A DNA stretch of 64,000 bases from Trichosphaerium sp. ATCC 40318 (GCA_038496445.1 JALMLS010000484.1:133490-197489), one strand, 5' to 3'; positions 34,960 to 45,571 are shown, numbered from the stretch's first letter. Translations and numbers: made by a program. The notes: a model not told the origin generated them from the letters alone.

Positions 34960-37180
34960 TTATACGCAGTTGGATTCAGTTGCAATGTTTCCTTTGCATT
35001 CTTGGTATTTTTGAAGAGTTTGGTGGAGATCAGCAAGTACGCTTGGACTCGTGGTATTTATCAAGTTTTTCATCTAAAACGTTGAATTATGATCTTATGT
35101 TGTCATATTATAATTAAAAAATAAGAAATACCTGGTATGGATCGCTATCAATATCATATAATTCTCTGAACTCAATGGATGTGTTAGACCATGTCCACGT
35201 GTGATCAAATTCTATGTAAACAAGATTGCTATTTTCGTTCAAGACACGCAAAGCACGCCAAGTGTTTGAAGACGGATCATCAATGTGCCTGTGTGGTAGT
35301 AAGAGTACAATTATATGTATGGAAACTAACCGTCACCAACGCCTTTACCAAGTACACACTTTTTATCACCTACCGGCGATCTAGGTCCTTTACCGTTGTG
35401 ACCATGGTAAGTGTTATCAGGTACCTATATTCTTGTCAAATACAGTTAAGCAGAAGCCATTGTAGTTTTGGAGTAAATGCTTTGTACCCATATATCTGCG
35501 TGGTCATTGTACAAAGCTGCAATAGATTTAAACTCTATTAAAAAGTGTTTTCTCCACGCATTCGTATACTTTTGTTTTTCTTCAGGGTCAAAAGGCTTAA
35601 AGTACGGGTTTTCTTCGGAAATAAAGAACGGTGCAAGACTCTTTCCTAAACAAACGTAAGTTATTAAAAGCTGCTTGTGTTGTTTATAAGGCACCATCCA
35701 TAAATTTTGGCTTTGCAACTCCAGCTAGATCGAGCATTGTTGGAGTAAAATCAACGTTGCCACTGACTTGCGGAATCTTGGAACCTGGCTTAATACCAGG
35801 ACCGCGAACAATGTAAGGGATACGGATATCAGTTTCATAAGGCTGTAGTTTGGATGTAGCCACGCGCCATTGACCTAGTTTATACCCCTAAGACTAAGAT
35901 AAGAACTAAGTCGTAAAGACTCAAAAAGAAAAACAATTGGCGCGCACGTGATCACTTGAGTAAAATATGTATGTATCGTCAAGTACGTCTAGTTTTTCTA
36001 GTAGTTGAACCACTGAGGATACTATTTCGTCTACAGATATAAGTGAGCTCCACCTATCCTTCATTTGCTGTTCTATCCATTGAGCTGCAAGGTCATTAAA
36101 AGGAGGGTTTTGTCTTATCATATGATGTTTGTCCGGAGAAGATGCATTCCAGTTCGGTGTTACTGGGTATGTCAAGTTTTCGAAAGGAGTGTTTTGAATC
36201 CAAGGTGCTGGGGTAGCAGGGAAGTGAGGTGCATGAGGACCAATATACGCGAAGAAAGGTTGACCTGTCGCGCTGTTAGAATGACAAAAACAAAGTGTTA
36301 AAAAGATAGTTGTGCCTGTTTTAACAATTTCGTTGATCCAAGAGAGAGACCTGTTTCCAAGTTGACTCGTTTGGTATGTCTCTGGCTTCATTTCTAAATG
36401 TTCTATATGTTTAGATCCGTTTGGGTACTTAACAAAGTATTTTTTTGAATAAAAGACATTGAAGTCACACGGAGAGTTTATCATTGTCATTCCAGCGTCT
36501 CTTTCCTTTCCACAAAAGTACTCTGGCTGGTCGTTTGTAACTTTACCAAATACTCCTTTGAAGAAAATAATGTAAGGTTTAAACGGAAAAAGAGAAGGAA
36601 GAGTCGAATCGAAAAAGCGATGGAAAATTATAACTTGGAAATTTACATCGCTTTCTCTTTTTCTCACCTGTGGCGTAGCCTGCGCTTTCGAGAATACCGA
36701 ACATACTTGCAGTTACATTGAATACATTGTCTTCAGCATTAATATGCATACAAGTACCATTGGGAGCGCCAATATTGTGGTAATAGCGCCCTTGTTGTTA
36801 CAAGTTAAAAAAAAAAAACGGTTCTAACCGCGTGATCTTATCACGTGCCTGTAATAAATTCTGTTCGGGAAGGACAGCAAACTGGTGTCGCAACGAAAAA
36901 GTTCTCGAAGTACGCTCCTTCATCAATCAACAGCTTTCTAGTTTCTGGCATCGCCTAAAGCTCATGTAAGCTAATCGTACTGTATTGTTGTAAAAAGGGA
37001 CTTCAGTTGGTACAATAATTATTAAGATCATACCGCAAGCGATCCTATATCCGTGTATTCACGTGGGTTTTCTCCAAGTTGAATATCTTGATCGTCGGTT
37101 AATATAAACACGAAATTAGGTTGTTTCGCCGCTATAACCATAAAAACGGTAAACAAACATATCGTGTATACAAGTGTCAT
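34960..37180 (-). CDS. GNS: N-acetylglucosamine-6-sulfatase-like secreted sulfatase, multi-exon
   Basis: [23 protein letters not shown]|[26 protein letters not shown]|[24 protein letters not shown]. Confidence 0.92.
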
Positions 37181-37661: not shown

Positions 37662-40600
37662 TTAAATCTCCAATACATCCTGGGCTTTATTCGTAATGGA
37701 AACTTTCTTGTATTTTTTCTTTAGGTATCTTGCCTTTGATACGTCTCCTACAAATGTCCATTTAGCAGAGATACATGGTATACAACGAGCAAATAACTCT
37801 TACCACAAAAAACAAGAATAGGCGTTTTGGCACATGTCTTGATTTTTCTTATACTTTTAATCAGCTTTTCTGCTGCACACTCATCTCCATCACCTTTTCG
37901 ATATCTATTTGTGATAACACATAACCTGTTGTTACAGAATCCTTTGAACTTATCAATCCATGCTAAAACCTCAGATGATGACTTCATTACCAATACCTTT
38001 AGTATTTTCTTTAGGGCAATTAATACAGCATTTTGTCGTACCTCTGTTTTCTTTGGCCTTTTTTGTAGCATTTCCATTATCTTCTTGTTTTCAACCGACA
38101 GATTATCATCCACCCACAAAATCAGACATTTAGCGTCCCTATACTTGCGTTCATACGAATTGATATTAGTACTGTCTATCGCCTTGTAATACACTAGGTA
38201 TCTTGGCAGAATCTAAGCAATTAAATGAGTACAAAAAGTGGTAGTTCAGGGTAAAACGCGAGAGGTGGTGGCTATGTACTTGGTTTTTTGAAAATACAAT
38301 AATCTCATTTGCATCTATTTTATCGTCATTACCACATGGATAGCCGGTTGATTTAGTGAGGACATAGTGAGAATCATAGCCTTTCTAAAAAAAGACCATC
38401 AAAAGTAAGTACATGAAAAAGGAGTTGTACCTTGCATTCTTTTCCAAGAAGGGTATTAGGAGTACCAGGTATAGGCTGCTCTGTTGCTGGATATGGATTT
38501 CCCATCATTATCCAGGATATCAACATGCATGGATTCTCTTTTTTATCGCCCCACTCAGCATACTTCCTTCCTACCTCCAGTATTAGTACAAGAATACATT
38601 ATTGTAACGTCATATCTGTTGTAACCACGTACCACAATCAGGATATTGAGTGAAGTAAATACCGTCTCCTTGATTCAACGTTAGTTAAATTAAGTTGTTT
38701 TGTTGCTTTACCATAGTATCCCGGATCTTTCTTGTTTGTATTTTCGTGTGGTTCTCTAAAGTTACCCCAAGCAATCTTAAAACTAGTATCCTACATATAA
38801 TGTTAGGTTTATTTTGTGAGCTAAAGAAAAGGATACCTCTGATGTGCCATGTAGTCCAGGTATGAGGTTTATTTGCTCATTGCCTGAAACACGCATCACA
38901 TAGCTCTTCAAATGATTCAAAGTTCTCTCTTGTGATTTACGTGTATTCTCATCACCATCACTATCACTCGCATCTAAGTCAATTAGATGTTGCTGTACAC
39001 TTGATAATAGACTTACTTGGTTTTTTAGATTGAAGTACTTTCTTCACAAATGTTTTGTATTGTTTTTCGAACTTGTCTTCAAGTTTTGGATTGTCTAGGA
39101 AGGCTATCTTCTCCAACTCATAAAAAGAATTACTATCAGTGCCCATGAATTTATAAAACATGTTGCTAGCTCTCAGATACTCATCATAACGTTCCTATAC
39201 TGCTGTAAGCACCTTGTCAAATACTTCAAAATCATGTGTACCTTGCTCTTTTCATTTTTTGTAAGATAGGTAATTCGTAACCCAGGATACTTTTGAGGTG
39301 TCTCCCAATTACCCACTTTAAGGAACTTTTCGCCATGTACGCTACTCCAGAAGTTATGGGTATTGTGCTTCCCATGTTTGAGTACAGGAAATCCTTCTTT
39401 TAAATGACACGCAGTGACTATATGTTCTAATAATAGTCAGTTGTGTTTTGTATGCCAACTAGTTACACTCACTTGTTTTCTTGCACTTGTATGAATTACT
39501 TGTAACCTTAGTAAACTCTCCTAGTTGTATACTAACAGGACAGAGTGGAGTTGGCGCGATATCCAAGACTTTTAAGTAAGTACCAGCACATTCCTAAAAG
39601 TAGATCAACTTACACTTCTACCATTTAGGTGTACCGTCCATGTCCATGGCGCTATGCCTCTTACAACCACTTTAATTGTAGAATCAACATAATATAAAAC
39701 AATGAGATTACCATAGAAATCAGAGAGTACAATCAAGTTTGAAAACAAACGGAAATCTTTGTTTTGGAACTCTATTTCTAACATTAGTATTCTCTTGTTT
39801 AAACAGTTTATTAACGTACTCCTCAACCTTCTTTGTAGGTCATTAAACACCTCCACTGATAGATCTGTTGATAGGTATTCATATGCCAAAAACTTTGGAA
39901 CACGTGGTACAAGCTCATATCGAGTAGGTAGCGACTATCACATTGTTAGTGTTGCTTGTATGGTATCAACGTACAATTGGTTTGTCTTTGTTTGGTTTAA
40001 CTGTTTCTACAACTTCACGTTCAACTTTAGAATCTGTCGTAGGTTTGAATGATAATATCTTCCAATCTGATGATTTTTTTAACAAACAAAACACTTGGGG
40101 TAGCAACCCTGGGTTCTTGTTCTTTGTTGCCTTAACTAGTACAATACTTTGCTCCTTTTGAGTCAAAGGTGGAATGTACAGCATATCTGCTTTGGGTAGT
40201 AGTGATATAATAATGTATCCGTCAGCCCCATACACGACCTGACACAAATGGCTTAACAATGCTTAGTATTTTCAAAGCGAGTTACCTTTTCTTCGTCTGT
40301 CAAGCGAACACAGAATGACATCTGTACCAAGAAGTTCATTACCTGTGTCACTTCACGTTTGCTACTTTTAGGAAATAGGCTTGAGATTCGAGATTTAACT
40401 TCTGAGTCAGTAAATACAGCGCCATGTCTATGAGTGCTGTTTTTAATTAATCTGTCCAGATGTTCTTTGGGCGCTAGAAAAGCACTCATGACACGAGATA
40501 GAATAGGAGGATGCAAACACAGCATGTATGAAGACTAGGTGAACAACCAGTCAGTGTTTTACAGATGCTGTAATGCACTTACCTCATCAAACATAATACT

Positions 40601-42865
40601 ACCAACCGAATGAAGGTAGTTCAATGCAGCAACCAACTCTATTGGAGACATTTCCATATTGGGCTTATCTTTTATCAAGTCTAGGACCGTACGTCTATTA
40701 CCAGTATATCAGCAATAGCACGGTTTTAAATCAAGCTTACATTGATATGATGTTTCCCTTTAGGGTATCCTTGTTTGTGCTTGTATTCTCAAGTGCCTTC
40801 TTTACAGTTGTATATATTGTGGGTACTTTTGGGTATTGGGATCTCAAGTACTTGGCTTGACGCTCTAAAATCTTGGCAAGAGCGCTAGTTCCTAGTCAAT
40901 CAAATCAGGAGAAATAACAAAGTATATAAAGGTACCCTCTAAGCATAAGTACTGTACTAATGACGATCCTATAGGAATCAAGGCTTGTCTATTGGACTTG
41001 ATTTCTCCTAGAAAGATATCCAGTTTGGATCCAAATACAATCACCGAGTATAGCTTTGGATCTTGGTCATGTAGTATCTTACTTAAAACACTACACCAAT
41101 ATTGAAGGTGTTCCTGCTGCTCTTTGATTGATGTTGACAAGTCAATCTAAAAAGTTGATGAATGAAAAAGCAAACAAACATGACGTAGATGTCAATAGGA
41201 ACTTACAACAATGATATAAATAACAAGTTGCTTTGCTGCAAAGTACTGATGTAACCCTTTGTATTCTATCTGTCCAGCAAAGTCTAACACTGTGAATGAT
41301 ACACCATTGAACCTAAAGCACATTAAATGTAAGGTAGACATAGTTTAAACGTACAACACATGCGAGGTATCAAAGCCGATTGTTGAGTCACATGTTTTAT
41401 TTGTTTCCTTTGCCAATGTCCTCACTAGTGTTGTCTTACCTAATACATATATTTAGCAAACACAATTGACTTATAAATACCTGATCCTTCGTGGCCCACA
41501 ACCATTATTTTGGCTTCCAATTGCTTTTTTATATTGTACTTTGAACGATTTACTCCATGAATAACTTGATGTGATACAGCATTTTCTTTGGCCTTGAGGC
41601 CATAGCAATAGATATTTTTGAACTGTTGTATTTTTTTATCTGATAATGTATCCATATGTAAGGTTATCACACGTGCCCCTTTAAATTCACGTGCCATAGT
41701 TGTGACTATAAAGTGTTACAACAAAAGTAGAAAATCTTAAATGTTAGTTTAAGAGCAACGTACCATCGTGAAGTGATACCTCAGGATCTTTTTTACAAAG
41801 GTCATAGATAAATACAATATCACAAGAACAGCCAGAAGAACATTTATCTTGATGCTCCTTAATATACTGTTTCATATCAGCATAAGCGCTTTTAGAATAA
41901 AATTCAAAAAACTGTGAGTCAAGACAATAAAAAGGTACAAACATAGTATCTAGTATCTCGGGGCAACAAATCAATTTTCTAAGGTTGCTATGATTAGATT
42001 GCTCTTCAGAACACACTTTCCCTAATATATATTCTTCGGTAGTGTCATCGATAGAGCAAGAGAATATTTTATCCACATTGTTAGAAAAGGCAACTTGATC
42101 TGGCTTTCCAGCAATACTTTTCTGGGTTTTACTACCTCCATCTAACTTCCCATCTTCTAAAACCCCACCAATGTATTTACGACCATCTGGCCAGTACTTT
42201 GCGCCAATACCATTGGGAACACGGTTATGGAACTCTCCAATGTACTTGGTACCATCTTGATAATAGTAAACTCCAATGGACTTGTAAGGGCGCTCCTTAA
42301 ATTGGCCTTTGTACTCGAGAGTTCCATCTTCCCTATATGTCTCTCCAACACCATCAAATTCCCTGCGTTTAAATTGACCTTTATACCTCAATGTACCATT
42401 CTTCCTATACAACTTGCCAGTACACAACTTATCATCCTCAAAAGTACCAATATATTTGGTCCCATCTTCGTAATACAACTCACCTTCACCATGAAACTTA
42501 AACTCTCGAAATTGGCCTTTGTATTGCAGCTTACCGTTCGGGTAAAACAACTCAGAAGTAAACTTACCACTATCAAATTGACCTTTGTAGCACAGACCAT
42601 TCGACCAATGTATGCCTCCATGAGTCTTTTTAGTGCTTGGCCATTGTTTACGGCCACCAGGACAATCGTCATGAAATGTGCGAATATGTAGTGTAAGTGT
42701 GCCTGTGCCATGGAACAGATCATTCTCAAACTGACCTTCGTATGTCATGGAAATACCTCTTTTAAGAGTTCCAGTGCCATGATACTTGCCGCCCTCAACT
42801 TGACCTGTATACACAGTATCACCTCTACGAATCTCCTCCATACCATTCAACACTTGTAAGTACAT
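37662..42865 (-). CDS. Roco-family protein: MORN repeats - Roc GTPase - COR - PARP-like ADP-ribosyltransferase - receiver-like domain; multi-exon
   Basis: MORN (YxGQFxxxxFHGxGxLY); P-loop GHEGSG|KTTL, STIG, LDFAGQIEY, GSKLD; COR LNYLHSVG; ART GLHGT, DPGYYG|DGIYFT, GNPYP, GYDSHY, NEIIVF..QILPRY; REC-like LILWVDDN...TPILVF. Confidence 0.85.
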
Positions 42866-43593: not shown

Positions 43594-45571
43594 TTATGAG
43601 CTATCTTGACCGACAAGCTTTGTGAAACCAGAAGGTTGATTGGTATGATAACTATAAATAGTGACAGCAAATGAATCAACTTCACTTGCTTTAACTTCAC
43701 GCTTTCCAGGATCTTTTACATTGATAGCATGCTCTTTAGCACCTTTTTCCATTAATGGCACATAGTGATTTTTCATCAAGTCTAGTAGCTTGACAAACTG
43801 CGTACCAAAAGTCTTATGCATAAAATACGATCCGTTCTTAAACACTATGTTAGATTTATTGATTTTGTTAGTAATGTTTTTTGCGTACTTGTAAGAAGAT
43901 TTCGAGAATACTGGCTGTCATGTTCTGTGGATCCATGTTAAGTAGTCTGGCAACCCAAGTCCACATGTTTTTCGTGGAATGAGGGTGATAGTTACCAAAA
44001 GACAATACAGAAAAAGCTGTAAATACAGCTATAGTCCCCTTCATTCTTAGCTTGTACTTAGCCAAAGATTCACCTTTTTTATATTTTAGGTCCTTTGTCT
44101 TATATTCGTCAATTGGTTTGTTACCAACACTACAAGAAGTTAAACAATTGTAATATCCAATACACTAAAAAATAGTAGCCGCCAGTCATAAACAGATACA
44201 CTAGTAACTAAAGACTCTACTAGGTGCTACTTTTAACAGTGAAATACAATGTCTTAAATACAAATAACTAAACGTACTTGGGTGGATACATCGGTACTGT
44301 GTACGGACACGATTCATAAAAAGCGCCCATCATCACCTTTGAAAAGAATGGTACTTTTTCTTTGACTTGCTGACATACGAGTAATGCTGCTGCCCCATAA
44401 GCAAATGCATATTCTGGTTTTGTTGAACAGAGAAAAGCTCCCTTTGAAATACAAGCAGTGCATATTCTATAAACTGTCGAACGAAGAAGCTCTTCGTCTA
44501 CACTTGCTTCTTGCAGTATCTTTACAAAAGCACTAGCAGCTTGCTTAACACGATCAAGTGTTAAATGGATCATTGAAAAGATAGTCAAGGTAGCACATAG
44601 TAGTTTTCTTCTTCTTATGTCCTTTCTTGCTTTCAAAGTGGCGTCACTTTGTTCGCACTTTAAAAAATACTCCCGACAAACTTTCCATTGGCGTATAGCA
44701 CCAACTGGGATAATATTCTAGCGGTAGAAGGGTTAGCTAGGCGTAGGTTATGTTTCTCAATCCACGTGATGGAAGGCTTAAAAAGTAGACATACCTTTAA
44801 GGTTTTTAGTTGAGATTTGCTATCATACAGGTTAGTACGTAAAGCAGGAAATAAACAGGCATTGGTACATTTTAATGAGTTGATCTCGGTTTGTTTTGTA
44901 AGCTTCCACTTTTTTGGCTTCCACATGAGCTTTATACTGAGCTTCTTTGAGCTCATGCTGCTGGCGAAGCTGCTCATTATGCTTTTGCTGAGCTTGTAAA
45001 TGAGCTTTGTATTGTACTTCTTTAAGCTCACGCTCCTCACTAGCTCGCCTTTGAGCATTCTCCTATACAGCAATTACCAAAAGTACCGTGTGGTAAAATC
45101 GTACTAAATACTCTCTCTGGAATTCTTCGCACACGTTGTCTATAAAAGCACGAATCTTCTCTCTTCGTCGTGCAACCTTTTCAGCAATCAATTGCTCTTC
45201 TTAACGAATACCACTTTAATAAACCGTCACCATAGACAAGAAGTGACTTACCACGTGCAATTGCTGCGCGATCAAAACGAAAAGGAAGGAGGTGGGTATT
45301 AGGAGCTACAACCAAGTCCTTCAATAGTGTTAAAACGTGTACTAGAAACAGAAAAACAAATTCTCTTTTCATACATTCGATCTTAACTTTTCAATCGCTT
45401 CATTCATCTCTTTAGATAGTTCCATACTTCTCATTTTCAAAGGTTCCGCCTACACTCAATGGTGATTAAGAGTCTTTTCAGTCGGTTTTCAAACAATAAA
45501 TTGCGTACACTTTCACGTCTCGCCTTCTCTTCTTTGGTAACCGTCACGGGGTAGTAAGACAAAGGATCCAT
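43594..45571 (-). CDS. GLE1: mRNA export factor GLE1-like, multi-exon
   Basis: N-terminal coiled coil; FYESCPYTVPMYP; RMKGTIAVFTA; WTWVARLLNM...TASILEIFLQ; FGTQFVKLL. Confidence 0.85.

What the first reader, a model, noticed from the sequence alone, without database searches (positions are those of the whole stretch)
37662..42865. MORN-Roc-COR protein with a PARP-type ADP-ribosyltransferase and receiver-like output instead of a kinase
Seen: one spliced frame links MORN repeats, a complete Roc GTPase (G1, G2, DFAGQ, G4), a COR-like region and an ART domain. The ART domain keeps HGT (38843-38851), GIYFT (about 38650-38663) and a candidate catalytic Glu (NEIIVF, 38304-38306), and is followed by a WVDD receiver-like fold. 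Known: classic Roco proteins (LRRK2, Dictyostelium Rocos) are LRR-Roc-COR-kinase. Inference: a repeat-sensor / GTPase-switch / NAD+-consuming effector design, similar in logic to NLR-type immune or cell-death receptors. I do not know of this architecture being described.
Basis: partly seen in the sequence, partly recalled or inferred. Interest (0 to 1): 0.8.

Follow-up and report, generated by a model that had tools for sequence, protein, structure and literature searches.

The report
Roco GTPase with PARP-type output
This marine-amoeba gene encodes an LRRK2-family (Roco) GTP switch that carries MORN repeats in front and, where known relatives carry a kinase, a PARP-like ADP-ribosylating enzyme plus a dead receiver-like domain; the domain combination is real and occurs in several other microbes, I found no paper on it, and its function is untested.

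Summary
On the minus strand, 42865-37662, 21 exons joined by 20 GT-AG introns of 40-67 nt give one stop-free 1,411-codon frame. Shuffled sequence needs 43-51 introns to cross the same span; the real strand needs 19.

- **MORN repeats:** pass Pfam's own threshold.
- **Exon-by-exon limits:** Pfam and PDB searches were too weak to name COR, ART or the tail.
- **Relatives:** a Trichosphaerium sp. transcript (P0049) is 49-90% identical to exons 14-21, abuts them at every junction, and passes Pfam PARP. Four environmental contigs carry a Roc open reading frame upstream of the same ART-tail unit. One contig reads from Roc G4 through COR to the ART His in a single frame, with LRRs in front.
- **COR:** only weak hits, COR-A E 0.068 and COR-B E 0.013, but in the right places and order.
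- **Tail:** receiver-like (hhalign P 0.003) with Asn at the phospho-acceptor position.

I found no paper on Roco plus PARP. The NLR-like immune role is untested. The scan has already noted this family at eight or more other loci of this genome.

The parts
37662..42865 (-). Whole coding region: 21 exons, 1,411 codons plus stop. Exons, high to low: 42865-41764, 41705-41481, 41439-41355, 41312-41207, 41146-40936, 40891-40741, 40694-40583, 40534-40286, 40238-39975, 39934-39635, 39593-39473, 39426-39242, 39194-39017, 38973-38837, 38790-38712, 38668-38633, 38570-38431, 38384-38280, 38212-38042, 37996-37804, 37747-37662.
   Evidence: All introns are GT-AG and 40-67 nt; 19 of 20 donors begin GTA. There is no internal stop. 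The gene is bounded by a GLE1-like gene upstream and a sulfatase gene downstream.
42131..42817 (-). About nine MORN repeats (residues ~17-245), all in exon 1.
   Evidence: Pfam MORN 2.1e-10, 40.3 bits, above the 22.5-bit cutoff. Relatives of 200-650 aa are generic MORN proteins only.
41511..42130 (-). Unassigned region between MORN and Roc (end of exon 1 and most of exon 2).
   Evidence: No credible Pfam family.
40860..41510 (-). Roc-type GTPase, from the end of exon 2 to the start of exon 6. G1 is split by intron 2; switch-I Thr; DFAGQ 41284-41270; SKLD 41029-41018; TSA at the exon 5/6 junction.
   Evidence: Motifs read. For exon 4, Pfam's best family is Roc (E 0.003) and the PDB hit is the Arl6 switch II region (E 0.08). 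Exon 4 is 65% identical over 17 residues to L007:3863-4078, which hits Pfam Roc at 1.5e-11, 45 bits.
39473..40859 (-). COR-like region, exons 6-11. The COR-A-type motifs are in exons 7-9 and the COR-B-type beta block is in exon 10.
   Evidence: Exon 8 matches L002 ORF residues 332-419 (E 4.6e-9) and L001:8511-9731 residues 7-97 (E 2e-5). The L002 stretch runs into the weak Pfam COR-A hit at 385-420 (E 0.068). L007:5079-5837 gives COR-B at E 0.013. The window's own exons give no Pfam or PDB hit.
39242..39426 (-). Exon 12, a short linker between COR and ART.
   Evidence: Only a weak colinear match to L002 ORF residues 724-751 (E 0.1).
38183..39194 (-). PARP-type ADP-ribosyltransferase domain, from exon 13 to the start of exon 19. 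His 38851-38849 (residue 1138), Tyr 38657-38655 (1173), Glu 38306-38304 (1254).
   Evidence: Exons 14-19 are 49-90% identical to, and abut in order on, the Trichosphaerium transcript P0049. P0049 hits Pfam PARP at 1.6e-9, 38 bits, above the 26.7-bit cutoff; P0052 scores 40.3 bits. The Glu is invariant in 15 relatives. The window's single exons give no Pfam or PDB hit.
37665..38131 (-). C-terminal receiver-like domain (exons 19-21). WVDD is at 38116-38105 and Asn 38909-38907... see note: Asn 37909-37907 stands at the phospho-acceptor position. The conserved loop ITNRYRKGDGDE is at 37915-37880.
   Evidence: hhalign of 16 family members against 7 E. coli receiver domains gave P 0.0033 over 84 columns (beta1-beta4). 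Controls gave P >= 0.14, the reversed alignment 0.8, and 0 of 60 column shuffles reached it. Atlas leads were Response_reg and OKR_DC_1_N at 0.84-0.89. There was no Pfam hit. The AF2 model was unusable, pLDDT 46.

Best explanation
The locus is one intact, intron-rich gene of a Trichosphaerium-like marine amoeba. It encodes a 1,411-residue Roco-family protein with this layout: about nine MORN repeats, an unassigned region, a Roc GTPase with all five G motifs, a divergent COR region, a PARP-type ADP-ribosyltransferase with the His-Tyr-Glu triad, and a CheY-like pseudo-receiver that lacks the phospho-acceptor Asp.

Shown here: the gene model, the MORN domain, the Roc motifs, homology of the ART and tail to a PARP-positive transcript, and the same Roc-to-ART-to-tail order in several other organisms.

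Inferred from what is known of LRRK2 and bacterial Roco proteins: GTP binding and hydrolysis in Roc, coupled through COR (the dimerisation device of Roco proteins), changes the conformation of the whole protein. That change gates the C-terminal enzyme, which here would transfer ADP-ribose from NAD+ to a target instead of phosphorylating one. The MORN array would dock the protein to a membrane or a partner, or sense one. The pseudo-receiver, with its near-invariant Asn-Arg-x-Arg-x-Gly-Asp-Gly-Asp-Glu loop, would act as a regulatory or interaction module rather than a phospho-switch. The biological role, whether immune-like or ordinary signalling, is open.
For: - **Single frame:** 20 canonical short introns restore one 1,411-codon frame. 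The real strand needs 19 introns against 43-51 in shuffles.
- **MORN:** passes Pfam.
- **Roc:** G1-G5 were read directly. Exon 4's best Pfam family is Roc. Its nearest relative piece, L007, hits Roc at 45 bits, and L001 at 27.7 bits, both above the 27-bit cutoff.
- **Colinearity:** window exons 5, 6, 8, 9, 12, 13, 14 and 15 match, in order, one uninterrupted 1,142-aa ORF of L002. Exons 18-20 match the next ORF. That ORF runs from Roc G4 to the ART His and is preceded by an LRR ORF whose end carries a P-loop.
- **COR:** COR-A (E 0.068) and COR-B (E 0.013) hits fall between Roc and ART in two different relatives. For two families named in advance, the per-family P is about 1e-6.
- **ART:** P0049 and P0052 pass Pfam PARP. 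Exons 14-21 abut in order on P0049, which confirms seven junctions, including removal of the in-frame intron 19. The catalytic Glu is invariant in 15 relatives.
- **Tail:** hhalign against receivers gave P 0.0033 with clean controls, and Asn aligns to CheY Asp57.
- **Recurrence:** four independent contigs carry Roc upstream of the ART-tail unit.
Against: - No RNA run was listed for this stretch, so this copy's transcript and junctions 1-13 are model only.
- No Pfam or PDB hit names COR, PARP or Response_reg on the window's own exons.
- phmmer of the COR-B exon against 1.84 billion representatives found only coiled-coil noise.
- A five-sequence COR profile found nothing in the PDB.
- The COR hits in relatives are below Pfam's cutoffs.
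- hhalign P 0.003 is no better than receiver against UspC, a generic alpha/beta match (P 0.0039).
- Both AF2 models were unusable.
- No enzymatic activity, GTP dependence or target is known.
Confidence: 0.72

Rival explanations
1. Same architecture, but the role is an NLR-like innate-immune or cell-death sensor. The variable repeat array recognises a pathogen-derived ligand (giant viruses or bacteria), Roc-COR oligomerises or switches on, and the ART consumes NAD+ or modifies host or invader molecules.
For: - The N-terminal sensor differs between relatives while the Roc-COR-ART-tail core is kept: MORN here, LRR in L002, a Ras-like piece in L007.
- ROCO genes are proposed immune receptors in brown algae, and a TPR-ROCO-TIR exists in Chondrus (PMC11378527).
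- PARPs evolve in host-virus conflicts (title of PMC4038475).
- Other agents' unchecked notes report about 40 copies in this genome.
- The nearest MORN relatives are bacterial MORN-caspase-like proteins.
Against: Nothing here tests it. I saw one copy only, with no measure of diversifying selection, induction or copy number. Dictyostelium Rocos with similar complexity act in chemotaxis, cytokinesis and development (PMC6337361).
Confidence: 0.25
2. The ART domain is a catalytically silent pseudo-PARP kept as a binding or scaffolding module, and the protein signals only through its GTPase and protein contacts.
For: - The PARP match in relatives is modest (38-40 bits).
- The C-terminal half alone (P0046) hits neither Pfam nor the PDB.
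- Pseudo-PARPs exist, for example TASOR (listed).
- The neighbouring tail is itself a dead version of an active domain.
Against: His, Tyr and Glu are all present in the window. The Glu and its flanking motif are invariant in 15 relatives from organisms of 38-58% GC, which is what purifying selection on an active site gives.
Confidence: 0.15
3. This particular copy is a silent or decaying paralogue of an expressed family.
For: - No RNA run was listed.
- The closest transcripts are only 62-70% identical, so they come from other copies or another species.
- The residue before the catalytic Glu is Asn, where all 15 relatives have Asp.
Against: 1,411 codons and 40 splice sites are intact. A decaying copy would soon collect stops, frameshifts or broken GT-AG pairs.
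Confidence: 0.1
4. Two adjacent genes, MORN-Roc-COR and ART-tail, have been wrongly fused by my model.
For: No transcript evidence for this copy covers junctions 11-13. P0049 and P0046 start inside the ART and are labelled as complete ORFs by their source.
Against: - Gaps between all exons are 40-67 nt, against about 480-730 nt to the real neighbours.
- In L002 one uninterrupted ORF runs from Roc G4 through COR to the ART His.
- Exon 13 (ART start) and exon 8 (COR-A) both match the single ORF L001:8511-9731.
Confidence: 0.03

Closest known systems
Roco kinases: human LRRK2/LRRK1, Dictyostelium Roco4 and GbpC (repeat - Roc - COR - kinase)
   Same: An N-terminal repeat array, a Roc GTPase with Roc-style G4 ([ST]-K-x-D rather than N-K-x-D; my knowledge of the family), a COR-type region directly behind it, and an enzymatic output domain C-terminal of COR.
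   Different: The output is a PARP-type ADP-ribosyltransferase plus a pseudo-receiver, not a protein kinase. The repeats are MORN, not LRR/ANK (one relative, L002, does have LRR). COR is so divergent that Pfam sees it only weakly, and only in relatives.
TPR-ROCO-TIR of the red alga Chondrus crispus, and LRR-ROCO candidate immune receptors of brown algae (PMC11378527)
   Same: A repeat sensor with a Roc-COR switch and, in Chondrus, an output domain of a family known to use NAD+. This is the nearest published parallel to the design 'ROCO with an NAD+-consuming effector'.
   Different: TIR and PARP are unrelated folds with different chemistry (NAD+ cleavage versus ADP-ribose transfer). Those proteins have no receiver-like tail.
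PARP / ARTD catalytic family (Pfam PF00644), e.g. tankyrase and PARP1 (His-Tyr-Glu) and the PARP10/14/15 group
   Same: The His-Gly-Thr, Gly-x-Gly-Ile-Tyr-Phe and Glu-Ile-Ile-Val-Phe ... Pro-x-Tyr-Leu motifs occur in the canonical order. Close relatives pass Pfam's PARP threshold.
   Different: None of the accessory domains listed in the two PARP surveys I checked is present. Neither survey mentions a GTPase, Roc, Ras or receiver partner (PMC2964712, PMC4245714). Sequence divergence is high (38-40 bits only).
Response-regulator receiver domains and their pseudo-receiver offshoots (CheY; N-terminal domain of Orn/Lys/Arg decarboxylases)
   Same: An alternating beta/alpha pattern, an acidic residue at the end of strand 1 (W-V-D-D), and a D-G-x-E motif after strand 3, as in CheY. 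hhalign aligns strands 1-4.
   Different: Asn replaces the phospho-acceptor Asp and Cys stands at the Thr87 position. The Lys109 position was not aligned. Pfam Response_reg does not hit. The family has its own invariant Arg-rich loop.
NLR / STAND immune receptors with enzymatic effectors
   Same: The sensor repeat - NTP switch - effector logic.
   Different: The switch is a Ras-like GTPase with COR, not a STAND (NB-ARC/NACHT) ATPase. No immune function has been shown.

Membership tests
Roco proteins (Roc-COR tandem) | Ras-like Roc GTPase domain with G1-G5 | tested here: met
   All five motifs were read in exons 2-6. For exon 4 the best Pfam family is Roc, E 0.003. Homologous pieces of relatives pass the Roc cutoff of 27 bits: L007 at 45 bits and L001 at 27.7 bits.
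Roco proteins (Roc-COR tandem) | COR domain immediately C-terminal of Roc | tested here: inconclusive
   No Pfam or PDB hit on the window's exons and none for a family profile against the PDB. Relatives give sub-threshold COR-A (E 0.068, L002) and COR-B (E 0.013, L007) hits at the right place and order. Window exon 8 is homologous to the L002 stretch that runs into its COR-A hit. The COR-A and COR-B hallmark motifs were recognised by eye, from my knowledge of LRRK2.
Roco proteins (Roc-COR tandem) | N-terminal LRR (typical of the family, not universal) | tested here: not met
   The window has MORN repeats. The relative L002 has LRR_6 at 6e-25 in front of the same core.
LRRK-type Roco kinases | Protein kinase domain C-terminal of COR | tested here: not met
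   No kinase hit on any exon. The position is occupied by the ART domain.
PARP catalytic domain (PF00644) | Profile match above Pfam's gathering score | tested here: inconclusive
   Single exons of the window give no hit, and the joined protein was not searched, by instruction. The transcript P0049, 49-90% identical exon by exon, scores 38 bits, and P0052 scores 40.3 bits, against a 26.7-bit cutoff.
PARP catalytic domain (PF00644) | His-Tyr-Glu catalytic triad | tested here: met
   His 38851-38849, Tyr 38657-38655 and Glu 38306-38304 were read directly. The Glu is invariant in 15 relatives.
PARP catalytic domain (PF00644) | NAD+-dependent ADP-ribosyl transfer | not testable with these tools
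   Needs a biochemical assay.
Response-regulator receiver (PF00072) | Profile match or CheY-like fold | tested here: inconclusive
   No Pfam hit. hhalign gave P 0.0033 over 84 columns with clean shuffles, but this is similar to receiver against UspC. Atlas leads scored below 0.9. The AF2 model was unusable.
Response-regulator receiver (PF00072) | Phospho-acceptor Asp at the end of strand 3, with Thr/Ser after strand 4 and Lys after strand 5 | tested here: not met
   Asn (37909-37907) aligns with CheY Asp57 and Cys with Thr87. The [TS]-N is conserved across the family. The Lys109 position was not aligned.
MORN repeat (PF02493) | Repeat profile above the gathering score | tested here: met
   2.1e-10, 40.3 bits against 22.5.
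NLR / STAND receptors | STAND-type NTPase (NB-ARC or NACHT) | tested here: not met
   The only NTPase is a Ras-like Roc domain, so it is not a member. The resemblance is in logic only.

The most novel reading that the evidence does not exclude
Roc-COR-ART-pseudoreceiver proteins are a widespread, undescribed class of protist innate-immune or conflict sensors. Interchangeable repeat arrays (MORN, LRR, Ras-like) detect invaders such as giant viruses. The Roco GTP switch then unleashes a PARP-type ADP-ribosyltransferase, and the invariant Arg-rich loop of the pseudo-receiver acts as a new regulatory or ligand-binding site. This would be a GTPase-based counterpart of NLR-TIR and NLR-ART systems.
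Probability: 0.2. Interest if true: 0.85.

Novelty: new variant of a known kind. Interest (0 to 1): 0.6.

Why it matters
Roco proteins are studied mainly because LRRK2 mutations cause Parkinson's disease. How Roc-COR controls the attached enzyme is still debated (PMC6337361). A natural family in which the same switch drives a completely different enzyme gives an independent system for asking what Roc-COR transmits to its output.

For the PARP field, it adds a GTPase-coupled PARP-type enzyme that neither of the two family surveys I checked lists. For protist biology, a repeat-switch-NAD+-enzyme protein with swappable sensors, in an amoeba whose genome is reported to be full of giant-virus-derived genes (PMC10521059), is a concrete candidate for testing whether amoebae have receptor-type immunity.

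Tried and rejected
1. **Exon-by-exon Pfam**: only MORN and a weak Roc hit; nothing for COR, PARP or Response_reg.
2. **Exon-by-exon PDB phmmer**: chance-level hits only, apart from the Arl6 switch II region for exon 4.
3. **The one exhaustive phmmer job**, spent on the COR-B exon: three coiled-coil artefacts. In hindsight this was a poor choice of exon.
4. **Word search with the MORN exon**: generic MORN proteins only.
5. **Exact look-up of the exon-1 ORF**: not on record.
6. **Metagenome and viral-contig scans** with two exons: nothing.
7. **Both AF2 jobs**, spent on single-exon pieces without an alignment: pLDDT 46-47, unusable, so no fold search was possible. They should have been kept until homologues were in hand.
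8. **PDB searches** with P0046 and with a COR-region profile: nothing.
9. **NCBIfam** on relatives: nothing.
10. **RNA evidence**: no run was listed.
11. **A 20-nt intron** (39613-39594) in my first model: rejected in favour of a 41-nt intron from the GTACAC donor at 39634.
12. **Retention of the in-frame 45-nt intron 19:** rejected, because both homologous transcripts lack those 15 residues.
Only a local check of length and stops was made.


Full report
**What is in the sequence.**
The window has about 37% GC and is eukaryotic. On the minus strand between 42865 and 37662, I built a 21-exon model from the reading frames and the raw sequence. After one correction it has 20 GT-AG introns of 40-67 nt; 19 donors begin GTA and one GTG. 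The coding sequence is 4,236 nt with no internal stop. It starts at the first ATG after an in-frame stop and ends at TAA 37664-37662.

The correction concerns my first model, which needed a 20-nt intron at 39613-39594. A minimum-intron search showed that the donor GTACAC at 39634, the same hexamer as intron 12, gives a normal 41-nt intron to the same acceptor.

The same search measures chance. The real strand can be crossed with 19 introns and the opposite strand needs 37. Mononucleotide shuffles need 43-51, and most cannot be crossed at all.

The gene sits between a GLE1-like gene and a sulfatase gene, about 730 and 480 nt away. No gap inside it exceeds 67 nt.

- G1 is split by intron 2 (41496-41481 plus 41439-41432).
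- DFAGQ is at 41284-41270 and SKLD at 41029-41018.
- HGT is at 38851-38843, GIYFT at 38663-38649 and the Glu of NEIIVF at 38306-38304.
- WVDD is at 38116-38105.

I also read a switch-I Thr in exon 3 and a TSA G5 motif across the exon 5/6 junction.

**What exon-by-exon searches could and could not show.**
The joined protein was not handed to any search or fold tool, so there is no direct whole-domain score for this copy.
- MORN passes Pfam (2.1e-10, 40.3 bits against 22.5).
- For exon 4 the best family is Roc (E 0.003), and the PDB's best match is the switch II region of Arl6 (E 0.08).
- Nothing named COR, PARP or a receiver on single exons.
- phmmer of the COR-B exon against 1.84 billion representatives gave only coiled-coil artefacts.
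- The MORN exon found only generic MORN proteins.
- No RNA run was listed.
- Two single-sequence AF2 models were unusable.

**Relatives settle most of it.**
The only long stop-free reference in the 3' part is exon 19, the in-frame intron 19 and exon 20 (window:37805-38212:-). It found an MMETSP transcript, P0046 (62% identity, E 1e-43).

A second search from P0046 gave 21 further proteins. One is P0049 from Trichosphaerium sp. ATCC 40318.

P0049 hits Pfam PARP at 1.6e-9, 38 bits. The metagenomic P0052 hits at 3.3e-10, 40.3 bits. Both are above the 26.7-bit cutoff.

Window exons 14, 15, 16, 17, 18, 19, 20 and 21 map to P0049 residues 1-28, 29-54, 56-65, 70-112, 114-152, 153-209, 210-274 and 278-302, at 49-90% identity. 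The exons therefore abut in a spliced mRNA of a close relative. That confirms seven of my junctions and shows that intron 19 is removed.

The catalytic Glu and the motifs around it are invariant in 15 relatives.

The window's composition, intron size and these identities fit the published Trichosphaerium genome: GC 37.69% and short introns. That paper mentions MORN among 'giant-virus-derived' models but not Roc or PARP (PMC10521059).

**The same order of domains elsewhere.**
Contigs carrying relatives of the ART-tail unit were fetched. In four independent contigs, a Roc-type open reading frame lies upstream on the same strand:
- L001: Roc 27.7 bits.
- L007: Roc 45 bits.
- The P0065 contig: an 842-aa product with Ras and Roc hits.
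- L002-L005: see below.

L002 (58% GC, seen in 17 metagenome contigs) is the most telling.
- An LRR ORF (LRR_6 6e-25) ends in a P-loop.
- It is followed by one uninterrupted 1,142-aa ORF, and then by the ART-tail ORF.
- Window exons 5, 6, 8, 9, 12, 13, 14 and 15 match that long ORF in order. The matched residues are 4-24, 140-172, 332-419, 425-448, 724-751, 787-841, 941-980 and 986-1011.
- Exons 18-20 match the next ORF.
- The long ORF contains the His-Gly-Thr of the ART.

So in a relative, Roc G4, the COR region and the start of the ART are read without any splicing assumption. This disposes of the two-gene rival.

**COR.**
This is the weakest named domain.
- L002's long ORF gives COR-A at E 0.068 (residues 385-420). 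That overlaps the end of the stretch homologous to window exon 8.
- L007:5079-5837 gives COR-B at E 0.013.
- Both are below Pfam's cutoffs.
- They are the two halves of the one domain expected at that place, in the right order, in two organisms. With the families named in advance, the per-family P is about 1e-6 each.
- The hallmark motifs of COR-A (the Leu-His-x-x-Gly helix-turn, then Pro-x-x-Leu-x-x-x-Met) are visible in exons 7-9 and in all relatives. I recognised these from my knowledge of LRRK2.
- A PDB search with a family profile found nothing.

I file the protein as a Roco, with this feature marked inconclusive.

**The tail.**
- Sixteen family members share a strand-helix pattern: W-V-D at the end of strand 1, and a near-invariant [TS]-Asn-Arg-x-Arg-x-Gly-Asp-Gly-[Asp/Glu]-Glu-x-Ala-Gly after strand 3.
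- Against seven E. coli receiver domains fetched from the K-12 record, hhalign gives P 0.0033 over 84 columns. Asn falls on CheY Asp57 and Cys on Thr87.
- Unrelated controls give P of 0.14 or more, the reversed alignment 0.8, and 0 of 60 column shuffles reach it. Receiver against UspC also gives 0.0039, so this score alone cannot separate true homology from a generic alpha/beta match.
- Two Atlas queries put Response_reg and OKR_DC_1_N, both CheY-like, among the nearest clusters at 0.84-0.89. These are leads only.

My reading is a CheY-like pseudo-receiver, at about 70%, that cannot be phosphorylated at the canonical site.

**How it probably works.**
By analogy with Roco proteins (PMC6337361), the nucleotide state of Roc, read out through COR, gates the C-terminal enzyme. 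Here that enzyme would be an NAD+-dependent ADP-ribosyltransferase with an intact His-Tyr-Glu triad. MORN would localise or sense, and the pseudo-receiver would regulate or recruit. All of this is inference.

The NLR-like immune reading has circumstantial support. The sensors are swappable (MORN, LRR, Ras-like). Published ROCO immune-receptor candidates include a TPR-ROCO-TIR (PMC11378527). Other agents' unchecked notes report about 40 copies. There is no test behind it.

**Novelty.**
- Full-text searches for Roco or Roc-COR with PARP or ART, and for MORN with Roc, COR and PARP, found no description.
- The Roco review lists LRR-only, kinase and DAPK groups.
- The two PARP family surveys I checked never mention GTPase, Roc, Ras or receiver.
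- Two conflict-system surveys by Kaur and colleagues cite Roco only in their references.
- Relatives exist unnamed in MMETSP, JGI, ENA and Logan data.
- I could not query InterPro architectures.
- The scan has already reported this family at eight or more other loci of the same genome, so this locus is a further member rather than a first sighting.

I rate it a new variant of a known kind.

Noticed in passing
window 37915-37880; also P0047, P0049-P0061: A near-invariant loop, [IV]-[TS]-N-R-x-R-x-G-D-G-[DE]-E-x-A-G, follows strand 3 of the C-terminal domain. It is kept even in a 28%-identical relative. It sits where CheY has its phospho-acceptor loop and looks like a family-specific functional site of unknown role.
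   Followed up: partly
L002:4549-10669 (ENA metagenome contigs, GC 58%): A relative with few introns: an LRR ORF ending in a P-loop, then a 1,142-aa ORF running from Roc G4 through COR to the ART His, then an ART-tail ORF. This is the same core with the classical Roco LRR sensor instead of MORN. The stretch after the ART His looks like read-through of an intron (Glu/Arg repeats).
   Followed up: partly
L007:3538-3825: A Ras-family C-terminal fragment (Pfam Ras positions 107-159, E 0.009) lies directly upstream of the Roc ORF of another relative. This echoes the 'pseudo-Ras/Rac + Roc' variants that other agents noted in this genome.
   Followed up: no
P0004, P0005, P0011-P0013, P0017, P0019: The nearest 200-650 aa relatives of the MORN exon are mostly MORN repeats fused to peptidase C13/C14 (caspase-like) domains. 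The one that carries a source name is bacterial.
   Followed up: no
window 35921-37180 (-) and 43594-44065 (-): The neighbours are a sulfatase gene (Pfam Sulfatase 1.1e-12) downstream and a GLE1-like gene (Pfam GLE1 7.3e-10) upstream. Both are on the same strand, with intergenic gaps of roughly 480 and 730 nt.
   Followed up: partly
window 38041-37997: Intron 19 is 45 nt, in frame and free of stops, so its retention would insert 15 residues into the pseudo-receiver without breaking the frame. The homologous transcripts lack it.
   Followed up: yes
whole window: GC content, intron size and 62-70% identity to MMETSP0405 transcripts point to Trichosphaerium. The published annotation of that genome (PMC10521059 supplement) lists short 'MORN repeat protein' models with giant-virus best hits. 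Some of these could be first exons of genes like this one that were mistaken for viral transfers.
   Followed up: no
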